A stretch of 63,987 nucleotides of DNA, filler included, from Platydemus manokwari (GCA_037951405.1; 5 parts of 5 records of this genome joined end to end with filler, not necessarily neighbours in it); one strand, 5' to 3'; numbered from the whole stretch's first letter, positions 12,036 through 21,907 are shown. The notes: generated from the letters alone by a model not told the origin. Numbers and translations are program-made.

Positions 12036-12629
12036 ATTAATAAATCATCCTTTATCAATTTTCTTCGATTTTTATTATTTTTTTTTAATTTTTACCTCAA
12101 TTTTTTGTGGTTTTTTATGATTAAATTCGATTTTTTCCTATTTATATTCGATTTTTAATGTTATATCCTTATTATGTCGAGTCATGATTGCATCATAGAA
12201 CCAAGAAAAAATTCCCATGACTAAATATCGATTTTGACTTCTAAATTTAATTTTTTTTTTCTCCTTTCAAAAGTTTCCAGCAATTTATTAAGTGAAATTA
12301 TTTCGTTGAAAATTTTCAATTTCATAAATGTGACCCAATGAAATTGGAGATCGAAATTTGACGAATTGTAATGATAAGATCAATTCTAATTTAGCAAAAC
12401 AAAATTTAATTCATATATAATCCCATTTATGAGGACAGAAATTTAGAACATCTCACTGTCAATCATGCTTGTATTTTAATAAGAAAGGTATTGGTTTTGT
12501 TATAAATATTTGTGTAATAACGATTTATAATTTTATTGGATTTTAAATTTGACTGTTGATTTTTATGGTGCTATTATTATTATTATGGATTATTATTGAT
12601 TATCACATTTTCTTTCTCATTTCAGATTG

Positions 12630-14733
12630 ATGAATAAATCTTCAAAGCGAAGTCATTCCAGGTAAATTCGTTTCACATGTTCATTTTTCTGTAAATATTG
12701 ATTTTTTCTTTTCAATATCATTGATAATTTTGATAATTTACTGGTCACCGTTTTATGTTTGTAGAGAAACAACGGACTCAGTGAGAGATGGTGGAATCGA
12801 CATTCCACAGTCTTCTAAATCTTTCAGTGCAGCCGATGCGGAAAATTTTCTGACCAAAGCCGTCAAAATATTCACATCGTTGTCTGAATTAAATGATCTG
12901 AAAAACATTTACGAAATGGGCAAGCAATTGAGTCGATTGTATTTTGACTGTGCCGAATTTCGTCCCCATCTCAGTGCAAAACTTATCAAACTGGAATTTC
13001 CGGAATTTGTCGTCAAAATGATGAAGAAGCTCAATAATATGGGCATTTTCAAGCATGATGACATTTGGTTTTCTTCTTTCTATTTTTATAATATATGCTG
13101 GAATTATTCGGAGAGTTCTTTTGAATTTGCTACTGCTTTGTCCAATGCAAGCCTACCCAGCTTGATTGTAATGAATCTTTTGCACAAACCGTATCTAGAA
13201 AATCTGTCAAGTCGCAACATCTATTTCCTCATCAAAGCCTCATTGAGCATCATGCACAATTTGTGTCGTTATCCTGGAAATAGATTCATGTTTAAGTCTG
13301 ATAAAGTTAAAGATGCACTCATTGATTTTACAAGTCGTGAAGAAGAACTCATTAGAGTAATTTCGATTCTTTGTTTAGCATTCCTTTTAGAAGACGACGA
13401 AGCGGCAGTGGTTATCAAACAATGGAATAGCTTTACTTTTAATTTTATCGATATAATCACAAAGGCTAAGTTGCACGATCGCGGCAGATTTATGGGATTT
13501 GCAACTTGGGAATTGCTTCAAGCCTTAACGATATTTAGCAGCAATGACAGTGTAAAAAAAGCTATTGTAGAATCCAAAGGCTTGGTGATGGTTTTTGATA
13601 TTCTTAGTAAAGCTTCAAATGTAGAAGAAGTTAGGGAATGTCTCATGATCGTCTGGAATTTCGCATTTGATAATGATTTGAAATCTATATTGATTAAGCA
13701 GCACAATGCATTACAGGTAATAGACTCTTTTCTCAATCATGAAGATGAGGAAGTACGAAACAATGCGGCTGGAATTAAATGGCTCCTCGAAGATCATATG
13801 AAAAGTGGTCGTTTATTGACAGAAATAGTTCCATCACAACCAACCCCGATAAGCACAGCTGGATTTCATGTCTATATCTGTTTTGCAGAAGAAAATCGGG
13901 AAATAGTTCAGAGGATTGCTGACAGACTGAAACGAGCTAATTTGTCGCTTGTACTACCAAAAAATTCCAACATCGAATCGGCTCTTAAAAATCAAGAAAA
14001 TCGATACCGGGGAATTGTACAGTCGACTCTATTTTTGTTTGTTTTATCCGAAGCCAGTAAATCTTGTCAACAATGCCGTTCAGAAACACAATATGCAGCA
14101 TATTTGAAAAAACCAATTATCCCAGTAATAGTACAAACAAAATTCAAACCGTCTGGTTGGATGGATAAGTTCACTGATAAATTGTTCTTTGATTTCGGTG
14201 GCAAACGAGATTTTGAAACTAATATTGAATTGTTGAAAAATACTCTTCTTAGTGAATGTATGAACGATGAAGATTTGAAGTCCGTTCATTCTTTGAAATC
14301 GGGAAATTCTCGACCGGAAATAATCGCTCAATTGCCGGTTAACTGCCGGTTGCAGTTAGCTCACTCAATGGACTCTTCACACAGACATCATTTCAATCAC
14401 AGCGCAAGTCTTAATAGCAATCAACCACCGCTTCTAGATTCTACCGATCAGTTGCCAGAACTCGTCCCGAACAAAATTAACTCCAACTTATCAACCATAG
14501 AAAGTATTAAGAAATGGTCGAAAGAAGAAGTGACCGAATGGTTGGTGAGCAGTGATTTATCACATCTGAGATTAAAATTGTCTAAATTTAACGGAGCGAT
14601 GCTGGCATCTCTTCTAGAAATCAAACGAGAAGCGCCTGAATATTTCTATAAGTGCTTGGAAGAAAAACTTGAACTGCATTTCATGGATACTTTAGCATTT
14701 ATCGATGCCCTTCATAAACTGACTAGTTGTTGA
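12630..14733 (+). CDS. ARM-repeat / TIR / SAM domain protein (~666 aa); exons 12630-12661 and 12765-14733
   Basis: Exon 1 ATG AAT AAA...TCC AG|gtaaat joins in phase 2 to tttgtag|A GAA ACA. Helical ARM-like repeats (ASLSIMHNL, LLQALTIFSSNDSVKKAI, CLMIVWNFAFD, VRNNAAGIKWLL). TIR at ~13864-14260 (FHVYICFAEENREIVQRIADRL...LFLFVLSE...CRSETQYA..LKKPIIPVIV...PSGWM...FDF). C-terminal SAM-like domain at ~14506-14720 (IKKWSKEEVTEWL...FNGAMLASL). Confidence 0.85.
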
Positions 14734-17700
14734 AAAATAGTGATAGTTGCCGCTTATGATGTTTATTTACCTTTTCTCAATCTGCAGTCATTTTTATTTT
14801 TCAAGATATTCTTGTCTAGGTTTACTGTGTTGAATATTTAGAATTTTATCTATTGTTTTACAACATAGATTGCTGATTTTTTTTTAAAATGAAAGTGCTT
14901 AGAAACTTTACTTGATTCGATTAAAAAATAGCAAAGAAATGAAGTTGTTTCTTATTGAATATTATATTAAAATGTTCTTTATTTTTCCCTAATTAATAAC
15001 CAATGAGAGATCAGGAAATAAATAAAAATATTTATTTTTGTATTGATTTTCAGATGAAATAGAATTTTAAGGGAAAAATTAAAGAAATACGTAGATTTTA
15101 CAATGGATAAAAAGATATATATATATATATATTTATTAAGAATTTATATCAAAAATGTATTTTGTTTAAATGATTAGGTTAAATGTGCTTTGTGTGGCTG
15201 ACTTTTTAATTCGTTTCCAATCCACAGTTTATGAATTAGTAGCACTTAATGTAGCGAACACGTATTTGGATTCAATTCTGAGAAGATCAACTGCAGAACA
15301 TTATAGAAAAGAAGACGATATTATACTAGACGTCGAAAAATTATGGATAGCAAAACACGATTGTTATCAAGTTCAAATGTTGATTAGGTATTTTTCTGGA
15401 TCGCCTCTATTTTATCAACTACGAACAAATGTAGTGGATTGCTAGTGGAAAAGTAGACTACAGATTTATCACAATATAAATATTCTTAAAATTTAAAAAG
15501 GTTTTTTATACAACACTCTTTTTTCTATTGTGATGTATTTTTGTGTTATCTTTTTATTAAATACGTCTTTTCAGTTTGAATTTTAAATATTTTTTTTATT
15601 CAATTCACGGGCATTCATTTTAAAAACCAAAAATTTCTTCGGGTGCAAAGCAGTAGGATGTATTGATTTTACGATATCTATATATGTCATTGTATTCATG
15701 GGATTCTTGTCTGTGCGCATTAGGATTTCGGAAAGTGTTTCTTATCACTGTCGTTGATTTTATCCAGATGTTTTGAGGATATTAATTGGTCGTCATAAAT
15801 TTATAAATATCGAACTTATAAACGAAAAAATGCTGATGTAAATATTAAAGGAATAGTTTAGAGAAAGATTTCTTACCCCGTTTTCTATCATAATGAAATC
15901 TCGTCATTCTCTGCAGTGATTTGAAAATTTAATTAATTAGAAATATTTCGTATTTTTAGATTTCAAACAAAATGACGACAAAAATTATGTTGATGTTCTT
16001 CTTTGTAGTGTAGTGAAATGAATTCAGAGATTTGATGGGTAATAATTCAGAATTATGTCGCAAATACTTGCTTTTTTAACCGGTCATATAATTCAATACA
16101 AGGATGGTCTATAAAACACAGAAATCCAATATACGAAATCTTGGTAATTCATTTCTATTTCGATATCGATTTAAACAAAAAATGAATTATTTGACAATAT
16201 TTTGACAATAAGTCATTTTAAATATCTCTTTATTTGTTGTTTAGAAATGTCAAATTGGTAATAAATTTTCTCATCCCGTGATCTGTCATTAAATAATATC
16301 ACGGGAATTTTATTTGACTTTTCTTTTCGTACAAGATATCACAAAAATTTCTCTCTACAGAAAAGGACATTTTTCTCATAAATAGTTCTTGAAATAATTT
16401 TTAAAATATGTTTTGATTATCGCTTTTAAAATATTGTTACCCTGGACATTTTTGAATTTTTTTCGATTCACAACATGTAATCTATTGAAGAGATCGAAAT
16501 TTAGCTAACACAGTTAATAACAACTTATATATAATTAAAACAAAAACATTAAAAATCCGAACATCCTTAATTAGCCATTGCTTTAGTCACGTAAATAAAT
16601 CTTAATATCTTAATTGATCAAGGCTTATTACAAAAAATAGCAAAACCAGTAACTGCTATCACCATTTTTAAAAGATAACAAATAAAGTCAGAATAGGTAT
16701 ACATGTTACTAAATAAAAATAAGATCATTATGTTATTAAACAAACAGACCTGTACATACAGGATTCTAATATATAAAATAGTTGTTATAACACAAAATGA
16801 TTATTGTTCAATCGTTAAGAGGCTTAAATTAAGAAAAGGGGTTCTTTGAAATACTTTCATTATGATGAATTTTCGCATGTACAATAATTTTATAAATTAA
16901 GTTTATTTAAATTATTCTGAGATTTTGTGCCAATATTGATTTTTATAAAAATATAATTTAAGATCAAAATTGTATGAATTAATTATTCTTCGATACTATG
17001 GTAATATATTTATCGATTTCGAATATTGATGGATCGATATGAATGAATAATATTATCATGTTGATAAACAAAGTTTAGAAGGATACTGTGTTGAGCACAC
17101 AAATTGATAAAATAAATGTACATGTAAAATAAATAACAGCGAAAAGGAAAATATAAAGATATAACAATGAATAATGACCAGAAATTAATAATAAATGCAC
17201 GAAATAAAGTAAAATTATAATAAAATGATTTAGTCTGATGTCTTTCTAATACACAATGCTTCTTTGACCTGGCTTTTACTGGATCCGAGTACTATTAGCT
17301 CACATAATTGATTATGTAATCAGAATTGTTTCATTCAACTGCGAATTTGCTATTTTGTATTATCTGTTTTTGTCTTTCGTATTATTTATAGCTAGCATTC
17401 TGATTAATTTGATAATGGTCAGACAGTTAGTGGAATTTATTGATCTATTAACGGTTGACAGTAACAAAAACTGATATAATAGTTCAAATTATCCATGACA
17501 TGTCATAGTCACATATCACAACACTAAAATTACATCATAATTTCGCAATGTTAAACCCATGAAATCGTGTTGTTATTTTTAAGCAATTCTTGTCGATTTT
17601 GACATCAGTACGATTATATTTAACTATTAGATAAATAAAATCGATTCATTTCCCCATTTTATTGGGGTTTAATGAATGTTTTCGATAAAATCCGAGTGTC

Positions 17701-20700
17701 ACTCTTTTCGTTTTACTTTAAAGTTTATGAATTGTATTCTCGTTATAATTACTGTACACCCTGTGTCATGCGTTCATCTTTTATATAATATAAACATCGG
17801 TATAAATATCCTAGAATCAAAACCGATAATGTCTTAAAATCAGTCTCAGAACAGTTGAGGCTATTTTTGAATTTAAACTTCACCTTGTAAAACATAAATA
17901 CAATTCCATCAATGTTTTTCTTTCCGACAAAAATCCCAAAATAACAATCGATAAAATTGAAGTGAAATTGAATAAATCTCATATGAAAGTACATGAATAT
18001 ATTTCATAAAATAATTCAATAATTCATTTCCCATCATACATACAATAAGAGAAATTTCTTTCAATCTAAACAGTGGACTTCTGATTTCCATTTTTGAGTT
18101 TTGTTTTCATTTAAGGAAAATCAATGGTTAATCATTCAGAGAAACGTGAAAATCGATAATTTGTGATCTGAACATACGAAAGGAAATTCATATCCAGTAA
18201 TAATTGTCTAATAATATGGAGTTGTAGTGGATAAAGTCGTAGGGGCAATTTGTCTTTGGTGGTGTGGTATACATTCAACAAAGTCGATGCAGTTTAAAGG
18301 AAAATCCACTGCAAATTGCATAATTATGGGAATCGAAAGTTTTATTCACGATTCCATAATGGTAATTATCAGCAATCATAATTTACCAGTGAATGTGAAG
18401 GACGAAGATTTCATTTCATTGATCAAAATATGCAAACGAAAATAATTGATTCTGCTGTTAATCAAAATAATGAAGTAGAAAATATTGACAAATCTAAAAT
18501 TTCTTCTTTTTTTAAAAAATATCTGCCTATTTTTAACTATTTTTAAAAATATTTCAAAATCCTTTATTTTCGTTCAATGTTTTAACTGGAAATATTGCAG
18601 ATGTTGAGTCTTCCTGGTGTAGAGCACAGCAATACTCGTTACTCTATTAATATGACTTCAAAAGACAATAAGTGGATCATTAAGTTCAATTTAGTATAAC
18701 AATGGACAAATCAGTCACATGGGACTGAGAACTTAAATAAGATTTGTCAATTAAATAAAAACGGATTTTGTCCGTTCACAATCTTATCGATACGGTCTAA
18801 TGATCAACTCCTGACCTTACCACGACGCTTGTAAATACCATAATCCATACTCTTTTACAATACATTGCAGTTAATTCTACTAATGTTAGTAAATACTTTC
18901 ACTAATATAGTGTTCAATGTTTTAGAAATATAAATAAATTTCCCAGGTCGAAAAATCATTCTTGTCAGTCCTTTTAGTGGCAGTCTTCATCTGATTATCA
19001 TGACATTATATACTGATTTTTCTCTCCTCACTGTGTTGCAATTCCACACACGTTAGCTTGACATTTATAAAATGTCAAATCAATAATTATCGATTTATTC
19101 CGAATAAACAAATTATATTTTTTAATTATTTTATTTTATTAGTTTTTAGTGGTTATTATTCGTTGTGCTCTTAGGAGAAAAAATATCAATTCCCCTGTCA
19201 AATTCTTTGCTTTATATAAAAATATTAATCAATAAAAGTTTTATAAAATTATTTACTCTAATTATTAGTGATTCTTAAAATGTGAATGTCGAAATTCTAA
19301 TCGATAAATAATAATATTAATAAATATTTATTGACAAAACAACGGCCTTGCTGAGATTAAGGTCGCGAGTGTGACATGTTTTAATAACGACATACTTTTA
19401 TTGCCAGTTGATCCAACAGTCACAGAAATTTTTAGTAAAACACATGATCCTATTTACCAAAATTCGTGATTAACTTTTATCGAAGTAACTCTGAGCAGAT
19501 TATGAAACGGAAATCAAGATTTAAATACAAAATAGATTAATATCGTTACAAACAAATCCATTGTATTTTTAAGCTTCTTGTCATAGATAGAATATATTCG
19601 GCGTTTCGAAAATTACTAATGCACCCTTAATGTACTGCCCGTAAAATATTTTTTAAATGTTATATTTTTTTTGATAAATCACTAAGCCTATGACAATTAT
19701 AATTCTAAACCATTTTTAGGAGTTCACTGATAGCCAGACTGCATATCGAACATCCAATCCCAAGCGAGAAAGTACCAAATATTTGATTGGATCAAAATTT
19801 ATGAACTCAATACTTCAAAAATCTTATGTATTTGTAGAGAGATTCTGTTGGTTAAAATTATTTCGAAATAAATAATCGTATATAATCATTAAATTCAGCC
19901 TTGATGCATCTAATACCGATTTAAGAACCAGGATACAATTGTTAGTCTTACTGATGATGGCTTTTTCTATCATTGTGTAATAATGATAAACAATATATTG
20001 TGTTTTAAGCACTATTTTGAGTGCATTCATCGTAATTACGAGCCCTCAGAGATAAAATTAAGCCACAATTATAATCAGATCCCTTTTCAATTGAAAGAAA
20101 ACTATAACTTAATAATTTGTTAACACCGTGCTATTTGTTATTGTTGTCTTTGTGTTACCAAGCAACATCATGTGTATATTCCATATCGTTCTCTTTGCTG
20201 AATATATTCCTTGGATAAACTTTAAAAAAAACATCATAAACATTCGTGTAATTTCTCAAGGCTTTTGAAATTTTTTCTTGATTGATATCGATATACTACA
20301 TGTGGTTATTCACATTAAATAATTTAACAAATATTTATTCCAGAATTAACACACAGCTAAAGATAGATTGACAGTTATCAACTGTGGTTCACTTGATAAT
20401 GACCAACAACATACATAATATCAATCTAATATCCCTTTATTGTAGTTTTTTTGAATTTTCATTAGATTTTCAGAAAACTCGGTTAACAACAGCAATTTTC
20501 CGGGCACAAACAACGTGATTCAAAAATTTCAAACAACATTCGAGTTGGTAAAGAAAATATTGTGATTAGGAGAAACACCGTAATTATTTTACAAAAGCGA
20601 TGCCGAACAGAACTTTAGTATAAAGCGAAAATTATTGGACTATCAAATATATTCAATTTCTCTTTATTAATTTATCCGTGACATAATGGAAAACTCGAAA

Positions 20701-21907
20701 ATGTGGCATTTATGTTTTATAAAAGTATTAAAATGAAATAGACATATCGAGCTACACGTCTGTTTATCGTTATATATAGATCCAATCACAATTTGTTGAA
20801 AACTAACGAGTATCCTTTTTTTAATATTAAGTGTGTCGAGTGAGATGAAATTACGCAAAAGAAAAAAAATTAACCTTAGAACTCGTGTTTAAGCACTTTA
20901 AATCTTTACATGCCCACTCAACCCTACAGGCATAGCAATCAGCCAATCACAACGGAGTTAGATGGTAAACGACAATTGGAAAAAAGCATGTCATGAGTTT
21001 CATAAGTTCATTTTTAGTTAAATAAATTTTAATTAAATAAAAAAATCATGTAGAAATGTTGCGATTAAAATAGGAACTTGATTTGAAAACTGTGTTTTGT
21101 CCCTGTTCGGCATCCTTTAAATTGAGATGTTAATAGAATTATCCTAATAAATCAAACATCGCAATTACATATAAAATTTATTCATTATAACAAAGTAGGT
21201 CACACCCCTTTTAAATCCAATTTTTCATTTCATATTACTTACTAAAACGAACAAATTGAATTTATGATAATATTTTATTACAAGAGCTAGAATATTGATT
21301 AAGTTGAAGCACAGTTTATCGAATTAATAAAAAACATCATTTCAGTCATCATCTTATGCAGGGAAATTGATTTAATATAAATGTAAGGCTTAGGTCTTAA
21401 ATTGTTAATTAAAATTCTCAATTACAACTTTTGCGAAAAACACCAGTTAATTCGCAATCGATTTCTATGAAGCTTTGCTTAAAAATAATTAATTTTAAAG
21501 TCAAAGTGTTTCACGAATAACATGTCAAATTTATTAATTAAAGATTCCTAATTCGTTATTTAGAAATTAAATTCACAAATTAAGCCAGTTAATTCTATTG
21601 CAACTTGGGTTAATTTTTAATTGCAACGATGTAAAGTTATGATTTATGATAAATTAAATTCATCCAACGCTAAATTAGCAAATCAATGACTAAAGTTTAA
21701 AACTTATGTGCTAAAATGAAATTTTAAATTTTTTGAGTATATTGCAAAAATTTACATAGTTTATTTAATTATATTCTTTAAAAACATTTTGAATTATTTA
21801 TTTAAGTAATTAAAAAGAATTTTAATTGTTTGAAATCAAATATTAAATACACTAGAACTTTAAAATCTCCTTAAAATTTGATTATTTGAAAACGGATAAA
21901 AGTAGGT

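What the first reader, a model, noticed from the sequence alone, without database searches (positions are those of the whole stretch)
12630..14733. SARM1-like parts in a different order: ARM-TIR-SAM protein, candidate NAD+-consuming immune/degeneration signalling enzyme
Seen: an intact ~666-aa ORF with helical ARM-like repeats, a TIR_2-type domain and one C-terminal SAM-like domain after a low-complexity linker. Known: SARM1/TIR-1 is ARM-SAM-SAM-TIR, with ARM autoinhibition, SAM oligomerisation and TIR NADase activity; enzymatic TIRs also act in plant and bacterial (Thoeris) immunity. Inference: this is not a SARM1 orthologue but may be a separately arranged sensor-enzyme-oligomeriser module. 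I recall similar uncharacterised ARM-TIR-SAM models in other invertebrates, so the family may be widespread but functionally undescribed.
Basis: partly seen in the sequence, partly recalled or inferred. Interest (0 to 1): 0.75.

Follow-up and report, generated by a model that had tools for sequence, protein, structure and literature searches.

The report
Flatworm ARM–TIR–SAM gene, known family
This is a real, expressed flatworm gene for a protein with armadillo repeats, a TIR domain and one SAM domain; it belongs to a large, already catalogued animal family that is not SARM1, and its suspected NAD+-cleaving activity is unproven.

Summary
A two-exon gene (12630-12661 and 12765-14733, + strand, 103-nt GT..AG intron) encodes 666 aa. 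A spliced transcript from a related species confirms the splice (97% aa identity, dN/dS 0.013).

All three domains are real:
- canonical beta-catenin/Vac8-type ARM repeats (family profile vs PDB, E 1e-39 to 1e-25);
- a TIR_2 domain (Pfam E 6.5e-15, TIR fold by Foldseek) that keeps the catalytic-position Glu;
- one C-terminal SAM (family profile vs PDB SAMs, E 1e-13 to 1e-5).

It is not a SARM1 orthologue. The domain order differs, there is one SAM, and the TIR profile scores CRISPR Cat1, plant, MyD88 and TLR TIRs above SARM1.

It is the flatworm member of a very large animal ARM–TIR–SAM family: 745 clusters at E<1e-10, and 134 of 176 fetched proteins share this order. Members come from molluscs, annelids, nemerteans, echinoderms, hemichordates, lancelets and lungfish.

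The family is already catalogued. In a 2026 preprint the isolated TIR of the Schistosoma orthologue made no cADPR isomer in E. coli, while an oyster relative's TIR did.

Verdict: a new member of a known kind. An oligomerisation-gated NADase role is plausible but untested. Interest is modest.

The parts
12444..12629 (+). probable 5' UTR
   Evidence: The related transcript L001 aligns at bases 1-51 to 12444-12496 and at 158-198 to 12621-12661. The stretch between is too diverged to align, so the limits are approximate.
12630..12661 (+). exon 1: start codon, 10 codons and the first 2 bases of a split Arg codon
   Evidence: Sequence read. The same 11 N-terminal residues occur in P0001. Transcript alignment.
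12662..12764 (+). intron, 103 nt, GTAAAT...TAG
   Evidence: Absent from the spliced transcript L001 of a related species.
12765..14733 (+). exon 2: 655 codons plus TGA stop
   Evidence: 97% aa identity to P0001 without gaps. dN/dS 0.013.
12823..13815 (+). armadillo-repeat domain (exon-2 residues about 20-350); the first half is the best conserved part of the protein
   Evidence: AF2 helical repeats, pLDDT mostly 84-95. Foldseek top hits are designed ARM proteins. Family ARM profile vs PDB: OR497 9e-39, Vac8 1.6e-32, beta-catenin 7e-25. Mean pairwise identity among flatworms is 77% for residues 1-210, against 44% for TIR.
13861..14292 (+). TIR domain (exon-2 residues 366-509)
   Evidence: Pfam TIR_2 E 6.5e-15. 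Domain model pLDDT 88.4. Foldseek hits MyD88, Hydra TRR-2, SARM1, SPARTA and BtpA TIRs at E 7e-6 to 3e-4, TM 0.5-0.7.
14083..14085 (+). codon of the catalytic-position glutamate (E440 of exon 2, E451 of the 666-aa protein)
   Evidence: Translation. Invariant in 16 of 16 flatworm orthologues and present in 66 of 70 wider family members. It aligns with the Glu of the C-x-x-E-L motif of Cat1, RPS4 and a plant TIR in HMM alignments.
14293..14481 (+). low-complexity, disordered linker
   Evidence: pLDDT 24-39. 28% mean identity and variable length among orthologues.
14482..14727 (+). single C-terminal SAM domain
   Evidence: AF2 five helices, pLDDT 76-90. Family SAM profile vs PDB: liprin-beta-1 1.3e-13, SARM1 SAM 2.5e-6, SMS1 SAM 3.2e-6. 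Invariant Trp and A-P-E-x-F motif.
14734..14786 (+). 3' UTR (minimum extent)
   Evidence: The transcript L001 aligns up to 14786.

Best explanation
Shown: this is an intact, spliced, strongly constrained gene of a flatworm. It sits on the tree inside a clade holding Macrostomum and the parasitic flatworms. It encodes the flatworm representative of the ancient animal ARM-TIR-SAM family, a cytosolic protein with canonical armadillo repeats, a TIR_2-type domain that keeps the catalytic glutamate, a disordered linker and one SAM domain. It was assembled independently of SARM1.

Inferred mechanism: the beta-catenin-like ARM groove holds a conserved endogenous partner or an inhibitory peptide. The SAM domain drives self-association. 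Clustering of the TIR domains then forms composite active sites that cleave NAD+ to ADPR, cADPR or a related product, and/or builds a TIR signalling scaffold. The N-terminal ARM half is far better conserved than the TIR, and the gene occurs in one or two copies per species. I therefore expect a regulated housekeeping or stress-signalling switch rather than a fast-evolving pathogen receptor.
For: Gene reality. Domains. Family: 26 full-length flatworm homologues at 31-40% identity. 2135 library clusters at E<1e-3 and 745 at E<1e-10. 134 of 176 fetched proteins have ARM, TIR and SAM in this order. Named members come from gastropods, a bivalve, nemerteans, an annelid, crinoids, a sea star, a hemichordate, lancelets and a lungfish. 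The tree places the window protein in a starred 20-row clade whose named members are all flatworms, including Macrostomum. Catalytic Glu: invariant in orthologues and present in 66 of 70 family members, aligned to the catalytic Glu of plant and CRISPR TIR NADases. Related animal TIRs of this sequence type (oyster 639-aa protein, an Adineta 666-aa protein, fish TIR-only proteins) make cADPR or deplete NAD+ in E. coli in a Glu-dependent way (Hurieva et al. 2026). The ARM N-half is 77% identical across flatworm classes and carries near-invariant groove-type Asn residues. The SAM profile matches polymer-forming SAMs (ETV6, SHANK, DGK-delta, SARM1).
Against: The isolated TIR of the Schistosoma haematobium orthologue (A0A094ZSC3, residues 392-541, Glu481) is not marked active in Table S4 of Hurieva et al. 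The same is true of an Echinococcus paralogue and four TIRs of the core cluster. The window's TIR departs from the family consensus at four near-invariant positions (S13C, Y14F, Y72S, S75C of the domain). The family also lacks the Trp four residues before the Glu that SARM1, plant and many bacterial NADase TIRs carry (the role of that Trp is from my own knowledge). The region where TIR domains carry the BB loop is short and poorly modelled here (pLDDT 46-64) and highly variable among flatworm orthologues. No self-association was supported: the SAM homodimer test gave no verdict. No expression, localisation or phenotype data exist for this gene.
Confidence: 0.5

Rival explanations
1. Non-enzymatic scaffold. 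The TIR and SAM domains only build a higher-order signalling platform, for example upstream of a MAP-kinase cascade as first proposed for C. elegans TIR-1. The ARM repeats recruit clients, and the conserved Glu is structural.
For: The orthologous schistosome TIR and five related TIRs gave no cADPR isomers. Foldseek's best single hits are the scaffold TIRs of MyD88 and Hydra TRR-2. The TIR is less conserved than the ARM and SAM parts. Hurieva et al. note that some human TIRs with a Glu at this position are inactive.
Against: The Glu and the C-R-x-E motif are kept in 66 of 70 family members across phyla, which is hard to explain without catalysis. Flatworms are reported to lack TLRs (PMC7958881), so a classical TLR-adaptor role has no receptor. 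The assays used isolated domains and measured only three products.
Confidence: 0.3
2. The TIR is an enzyme, but its substrate or product is one the published screen did not measure. Examples are linear ADPR with NAD+ depletion, pRib-AMP/ADP-type or His-ADPR-type signals, NAD-capped RNA, or nucleic-acid-derived 2',3'-cNMP.
For: Hurieva et al. list these unmeasured products as a limitation. By profile the TIR is closest to a CRISPR-associated TIR (Cat1) and to plant TIRs. TIR proteins can decap NAD-RNA (PMC10937652, listed).
Against: There is no direct evidence. In Table S4 no NAD+ depletion is recorded for the schistosome orthologue's TIR.
Confidence: 0.15
3. A SARM1 orthologue whose domains were permuted in flatworms.
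For: It has the same three domain types. Full-length SARM1 appears among Foldseek hits from rank 33.
Against: ARM-TIR-SAM is the fixed order in a family that spans protostomes and deuterostomes. There is one SAM, not two. The TIR profile scores SARM1 (about 8e-4) below Cat1, plant, MyD88 and TLR TIRs. SARM1 is not among the 60 best hits shown for the ARM profile. Planarians are reported to have a separate Smed-SARM (PMC7958881).
Confidence: 0.03
4. A pseudogene or an assembly or annotation artefact.
For: None beyond the low-complexity linker.
Against: The reading frame is intact, splice sites are canonical, a spliced transcript exists in a relative, and dN/dS is 0.013.
Confidence: 0.01

Closest known systems
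Flatworm orthologues annotated 'TIR domain-containing protein' or 'expressed conserved protein' (e.g. Schistosoma P0010 / UniProt A0A094ZSC3, Clonorchis CSKR_100033, Echinococcus ECG_06502)
   Same: Full-length collinear ARM-TIR-SAM. 31-40% identity over 98% of the query. The same invariant Glu, the same SAM motif and a very conserved ARM N-half.
   Different: The window protein is shorter (666 vs about 750-770 aa). It lacks the conserved N-terminal M-D-H-P-E-P start and the long insert in the BB-loop region of the TIR. It sits on a long branch.
Wider animal ARM-TIR-SAM family (e.g. Lottia V4A0Y4 = P0051, Owenia A0A8S4NS68 = P0032; TIR cluster A0A0B7AZE4_1 of Hurieva et al. 2026; 'ARM-TIR' class in the Aplysia immunome; 'TIR-SAM' in amphioxus)
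   Same: The same three domains in the same order, the same TIR motif S..Y..S..C-R-x-E and the same SAM motif.
   Different: That family is often expanded to many copies per genome. The flatworm clade has one or two copies with an unusually conserved ARM half and a derived TIR.
SARM1 / dSarm / TIR-1
   Same: ARM, SAM and TIR domain types. Glu at the catalytic position. A plausible logic of sensor, oligomeriser and enzyme.
   Different: SARM1's order is ARM-SAM-SAM-TIR, against ARM-TIR-SAM here. The ARM here is the canonical beta-catenin type, whereas SARM1's is the NMN/NAD-binding type. The TIR is not of SARM1 type by profile or fold ranking. No octamer-forming tandem SAM.
Crassostrea (Magallana) gigas A0A8W8J0Z4 TIR (639-aa protein, TIR 369-497), shown to make cADPR
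   Same: The same TIR sequence type and the same position of the TIR in a protein of similar length.
   Different: It lies in a different TIR cluster (K1QUY0_1). Its activity was shown, while the schistosome orthologue of the present gene was inactive in the same screen. I could not confirm its full architecture.
Plant TIR domains (RPS4, RPP1-type) and CRISPR-associated Cat1 TIR
   Same: These are the best sequence-profile matches of the family TIR (E 1e-9 to 1e-5), with the catalytic Glu aligned.
   Different: The protein contexts are unrelated (NLR, CARF). The Trp before the Glu is replaced by Asn, Gly or Gln in this family.

Membership tests
SARM1/TIR-1 orthologue group | Domain order ARM - SAM - SAM - TIR | tested here: not met
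   HMM coordinates give ARM 12-359, TIR 377-508 and SAM 591-665 in the 666-aa relative P0001, and the same order in 134 of 176 relatives. AF2 segments agree.
SARM1/TIR-1 orthologue group | Two tandem SAM domains forming the octameric ring | tested here: not met
   There is one SAM-length helical bundle (573-654) after a disordered linker.
SARM1/TIR-1 orthologue group | TIR domain of the SARM1 type (closest to SARM1 TIRs) | tested here: not met
   Family TIR profile vs PDB: Cat1 1.4e-9, RPS4 4e-7, MyD88 4e-5, TLR1 1e-4, SARM1 8e-4. Foldseek ranks MyD88 and Hydra TRR-2 first, with SARM1 among many near-equal hits.
SARM1/TIR-1 orthologue group | ARM domain with the allosteric NMN/NAD+ pocket | tested here: inconclusive
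   The 60 best hits shown for the ARM profile are beta-catenin, Vac8, ODAD2, KAP3 and designed ARMs; no SARM1 chain is among them. Pocket residues were not compared.
Animal ARM-TIR-SAM family | N-terminal canonical armadillo repeats | tested here: met
Animal ARM-TIR-SAM family | Central TIR_2 domain with motif S..Y..S..C-R-x-E and a later G-W | tested here: met
   The window keeps S69, C78, R79, E81, P94, G105 and W106 of the domain. It deviates at Y72S and S75C, and at the first strand (S13C, Y14F).
Animal ARM-TIR-SAM family | Single C-terminal SAM with conserved Trp and A-P-E-F/Y-F | tested here: met
Animal ARM-TIR-SAM family | Full-length sequence kinship and placement on a tree | tested here: met
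   E 1e-118 to 1e-69 to flatworm members. Profile E 1e-100 to 1e-25 to members from other phyla. Nested in a starred flatworm clade within spiralian members.
Catalytic (NAD+-cleaving) TIR domains | [quoted passage not shown] | tested here: met
   E440 of exon 2 aligns to the Glu of Cat1, RPS4 and a plant TIR. Invariant in orthologues.
Catalytic (NAD+-cleaving) TIR domains | Measured Glu-dependent NAD+ cleavage or cADPR-isomer production | not testable with these tools
   Literature only. The S. haematobium orthologue TIR is not marked active, while the oyster and Adineta TIRs are active (Hurieva et al. 2026, Table S4).
Catalytic (NAD+-cleaving) TIR domains | Activation by self-association | tested here: inconclusive
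   The SAM homodimer prediction scored 0.02 against a mark of 0.32, returned as 'no answer'.
MyD88-type TLR adaptors | Death domain next to the TIR | tested here: not met
   No Death-domain hit in Pfam for the window protein or any of 16 orthologues.

The most novel reading that the evidence does not exclude
The flatworm ARM-TIR-SAM orthogroup, which includes the schistosome and tapeworm genes, is an independently assembled functional analogue of SARM1. On this reading, a peptide-binding ARM groove keeps the enzyme off. SAM-driven polymerisation switches on a TIR NADase whose activity is invisible in isolated-domain assays. It controls cell or neurite survival, wound response or regeneration in animals that lack TLRs.
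Probability: 0.25. Interest if true: 0.6.

Novelty: new member of a known kind. Interest (0 to 1): 0.3.

Why it matters
No ARM-TIR-SAM protein has a known biological role, although the family is among the largest TIR groups in animals outside the TLRs. It reaches from flatworms to lungfish. The flatworm clade is low-copy, under very strong constraint (dN/dS 0.013) and present in schistosomes, liver flukes and tapeworms. That makes it a tractable entry point for asking what this family does, using RNAi in planarians or schistosomes. If it is an oligomerisation-gated NADase, it would be a second, independently built sensor-enzyme-oligomeriser switch beside SARM1. As it stands, this window adds one more ordinary member and no new principle.

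Tried and rejected
- Single-sequence PDB search found only weak ARM matches. The full-length 16-sequence profile gave nothing below E 0.4. Per-domain profiles from a wider alignment were needed.
- The word-based search with the alignment returned the same 26 flatworm proteins. Relatives in other phyla appeared only in the exhaustive search.
- Complex prediction on two copies of the SAM domain gave no verdict (score 0.02). It is not evidence either way.
- Gerdol et al. 2017 (the ecTIR-DC classification) is not held. Two papers citing it do not name the ARM-TIR-SAM family number, so I cannot give its ecTIR-DC label.
- The rest of the piece (14787-21907) has no ORF above 91 aa, no Pfam hit below E 0.047, no tRNA, no Rfam family and no meaningful repeats.
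- The SARM1-permutation and pseudogene readings were rejected (see rival explanations).
- I did not build or submit the joined spliced protein. P0001 served as the natural full-length proxy.
- The source species was not identified. Only its position on the protein tree is known.

Full report
**1. Gene model**

The piece 12036-21907 is AT-rich. GC is 23-31% outside the gene and 33-38% inside it. Its only long ORF is 12721-14733 on the + strand.

Reading upstream in the same frame shows an ATG at 12630 followed by ten codons. A GTAAAT donor lies at 12662 and a pyrimidine-rich tract ends in TAG at 12764.

Independent support comes from P0001. This is a 666-aa protein called on a 2222-nt Logan assembly contig (SRR21676451, L001). 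It begins with the same eleven residues and is 97% identical, without gaps, to the 655 residues of exon 2.

At the DNA level L001 is 87% identical and lacks exactly the 103-nt intron, so it is a spliced transcript of a related species. Nei-Gojobori counting gives dS 1.11, dN 0.014 and dN/dS 0.013. The gene is real, expressed in a relative and under strong purifying selection.

Following the operators' rule, I searched exon 2 by reference (window:12766-14730:+). I never submitted the joined protein.

**2. Domains**

Pfam gives TIR_2 at E 6.5e-15, above the gathering score, for exon-2 residues 369-488. For the single sequence, the ARM and SAM hints are sub-threshold.

AlphaFold2 on a 16-sequence flatworm alignment (pLDDT 75.7) gives four segments:
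- stacked helical repeats at 20-350;
- an alpha/beta unit at 366-509;
- a disordered stretch at 510-572;
- a five-helix bundle at 573-654.

Foldseek places designed armadillo proteins first.

Per-domain profiles built from 37-70 family members settle the two weak calls:
- The N-terminal block matches a designed ARM protein (9e-39), Vac8 (1.6e-32), ODAD2/ARMC4 (2e-25) and beta-catenin (7e-25).
- The C-terminal block matches the SAM domains of liprin-beta-1 (1.3e-13), ETV6, SARM1 (2.5e-6), SMS1 (3.2e-6), SHANK2 and neurabin.

A separate TIR model (pLDDT 88.4) matches many TIR structures at E 7e-6 to 3e-4 and TM 0.5-0.7, with no clear favourite. These include MyD88, Hydra TRR-2, SARM1, SPARTA, BtpA, MAL, AbTir and plant TIRs.

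**3. Family**

The word-based search found 26 proteins. All named ones are flatworms: trematodes, cestodes and a monogenean. They are collinear over 98% of the query at 31-40% identity.

The exhaustive profile search found 2135 clusters at E<1e-3 and 745 at E<1e-10. Sub-profiles for the three blocks show ARM, TIR and SAM in this order in 134 of the 176 proteins fetched. Most of the rest are fragments.

Named members come from these groups:
- gastropods (Batillaria, Lottia, Plakobranchus) and a bivalve (Potamilus);
- nemerteans (Lineus, Tubulanus) and an annelid (Owenia);
- crinoids (Anneissia, Antedon) and a sea star (Acanthaster);
- Saccoglossus, Branchiostoma and the lungfish Protopterus.

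On a 56-row maximum-likelihood tree, the window protein and P0001 share a long branch. That branch lies inside a starred 20-row clade whose named members are all flatworms, including Macrostomum. The clade is nested among spiralian members.

Trematodes carry a second, 'long' paralogue with a 450-850-residue insert between TIR and SAM (P0025-P0028). The source is therefore most likely a flatworm that is neither a macrostomid nor a neodermatan. I could not identify the species.

**4. Relation to SARM1**

The likeness is in domain types only. The evidence against orthology is as follows:
- The order differs, and there is one SAM rather than two.
- The ARM repeats are the canonical beta-catenin type.
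- The TIR profile scores SARM1 (about 8e-4) below Cat1, RPS4, a plant TIR, MyD88 and TLR1.
- A planarian review reports a separate Smed-SARM among 20 S. mediterranea TIR proteins. It also reports that flatworms lack TLRs (PMC7958881).

This is an independently assembled architecture, fixed since before the protostome-deuterostome split.

**5. What is already known**

The class is listed as 'ARM-TIR' in the Aplysia immunome, with 11 genes of unknown function (PMC9334734). It is listed as 'TIR-SAM' in amphioxus (PMC2575513).

Hurieva et al. (bioRxiv 10.64898/2026.04.20.719644) clustered about 16,000 eukaryotic TIRs and scored the catalytic Glu. Their Table S2 puts Lottia V4A0Y4 (my P0051) and Owenia A0A8S4NS68 (my P0032) in a cluster named about 595 times in the stored part of that table, A0A0B7AZE4_1. 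That cluster has an N-terminal 'TPR'-clan region and GLU at the catalytic site.

Their Table S4 entry 103 is the TIR of S. haematobium A0A094ZSC3 (762 aa, residues 392-541, Glu481). By eye it matches the Schistosoma row P0010 of my alignment almost exactly. Its 'Active' field is empty, so no cADPR, 2'cADPR or 3'cADPR was detected in E. coli.

Other results from the same table:
- Also inactive: an Echinococcus paralogue (entry 142) and four TIRs of the core cluster (entries 149-152).
- Active: an oyster 639-aa protein's TIR (entry 153, cADPR), an Adineta 666-aa protein's TIR (entry 144, cADPR) and fish TIR-only proteins (entries 145-146).

The authors stress that isolated domains lack native oligomerisation and that several TIR products were not measured.

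**6. Mechanism**

Shown:
- The Glu at the catalytic position (E440 of exon 2, codon 14083-14085) is invariant in 16 flatworm orthologues. It is kept in 66 of 70 wider members, within a C-R-x-E motif.
- It aligns to the catalytic Glu of plant and CRISPR TIR NADases.
- The first 210 residues of the ARM region are 77% identical across flatworm classes. TIR is 44%, SAM 55% and the linker 28%.
- Two groove-type Asn residues are nearly invariant across phyla.

Inferred:
- The ARM groove binds a conserved endogenous peptide or partner.
- The SAM domain self-associates.
- Clustered TIRs cleave NAD+ and/or act as a scaffold.

Against the enzyme step:
- the negative orthologue assay;
- four departures of the window TIR from near-invariant family positions;
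- replacement of the Trp that precedes the Glu in well-studied NADase TIRs;
- a short, low-confidence segment in the region where TIR domains carry the BB loop.

The SAM homodimer test returned no verdict. I put the oligomerisation-gated enzyme model at about 0.5, counting unmeasured products. A pure scaffold is about 0.3.

**7. Verdict**

The gene is a new member of a known, catalogued but biologically uncharacterised family, and interest is modest. Its main value is as a low-copy, strongly constrained entry point, shared with medically important parasites, for finding out what ARM-TIR-SAM proteins do.

The rest of the piece (14787-21907) holds nothing recognisable.

Noticed in passing
window 14787-21907: About 7 kb downstream of the gene is AT-rich (GC 23-31%). 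It has no ORF above 91 aa, no Pfam hit below E 0.047, no tRNA, no Rfam family and no real repeats. It is either intergenic or holds small exons that I could not recognise.
   Followed up: partly
window 12799-12828 (exon-2 residues 12-21): A short motif I-P-Q-x-x-K-x-F just before the first ARM helix is invariant in all 16 flatworm sequences. It is modelled as coil but with pLDDT about 86, so it may pack onto the ARM domain as a cap or a cis-bound peptide.
   Followed up: no
P0025-P0028, P0031 (trematode relatives): A 'long' paralogue clade (965-1479 aa) keeps ARM, TIR and SAM but has 450-850 extra residues between TIR and SAM. It is sister to the ordinary neodermatan orthologues on the tree.
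   Followed up: partly
Hurieva et al. 2026, Table S2: The same TIR cluster that holds the animal ARM-TIR-SAM proteins also lists green-algal proteins (Chlamydomonas, Gonium, a pedinophyte) with an N-terminal repeat region. This points to a very old origin or to horizontal transfer.
   Followed up: no
P0038 (Protopterus), P0040 (Branchiostoma); Table S4 entries for gar: The family survives in lancelets and in non-tetrapod vertebrates (lungfish, gar, bonefish). As far as I know it is absent from mammals, which implies loss on the tetrapod or amniote line.
   Followed up: no
L001 vs window 12765-14730: Synonymous divergence from the nearest relative is near saturation (dS 1.1), yet only 19 of 655 residues differ. 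The two are distinct species, not strains.
   Followed up: yes
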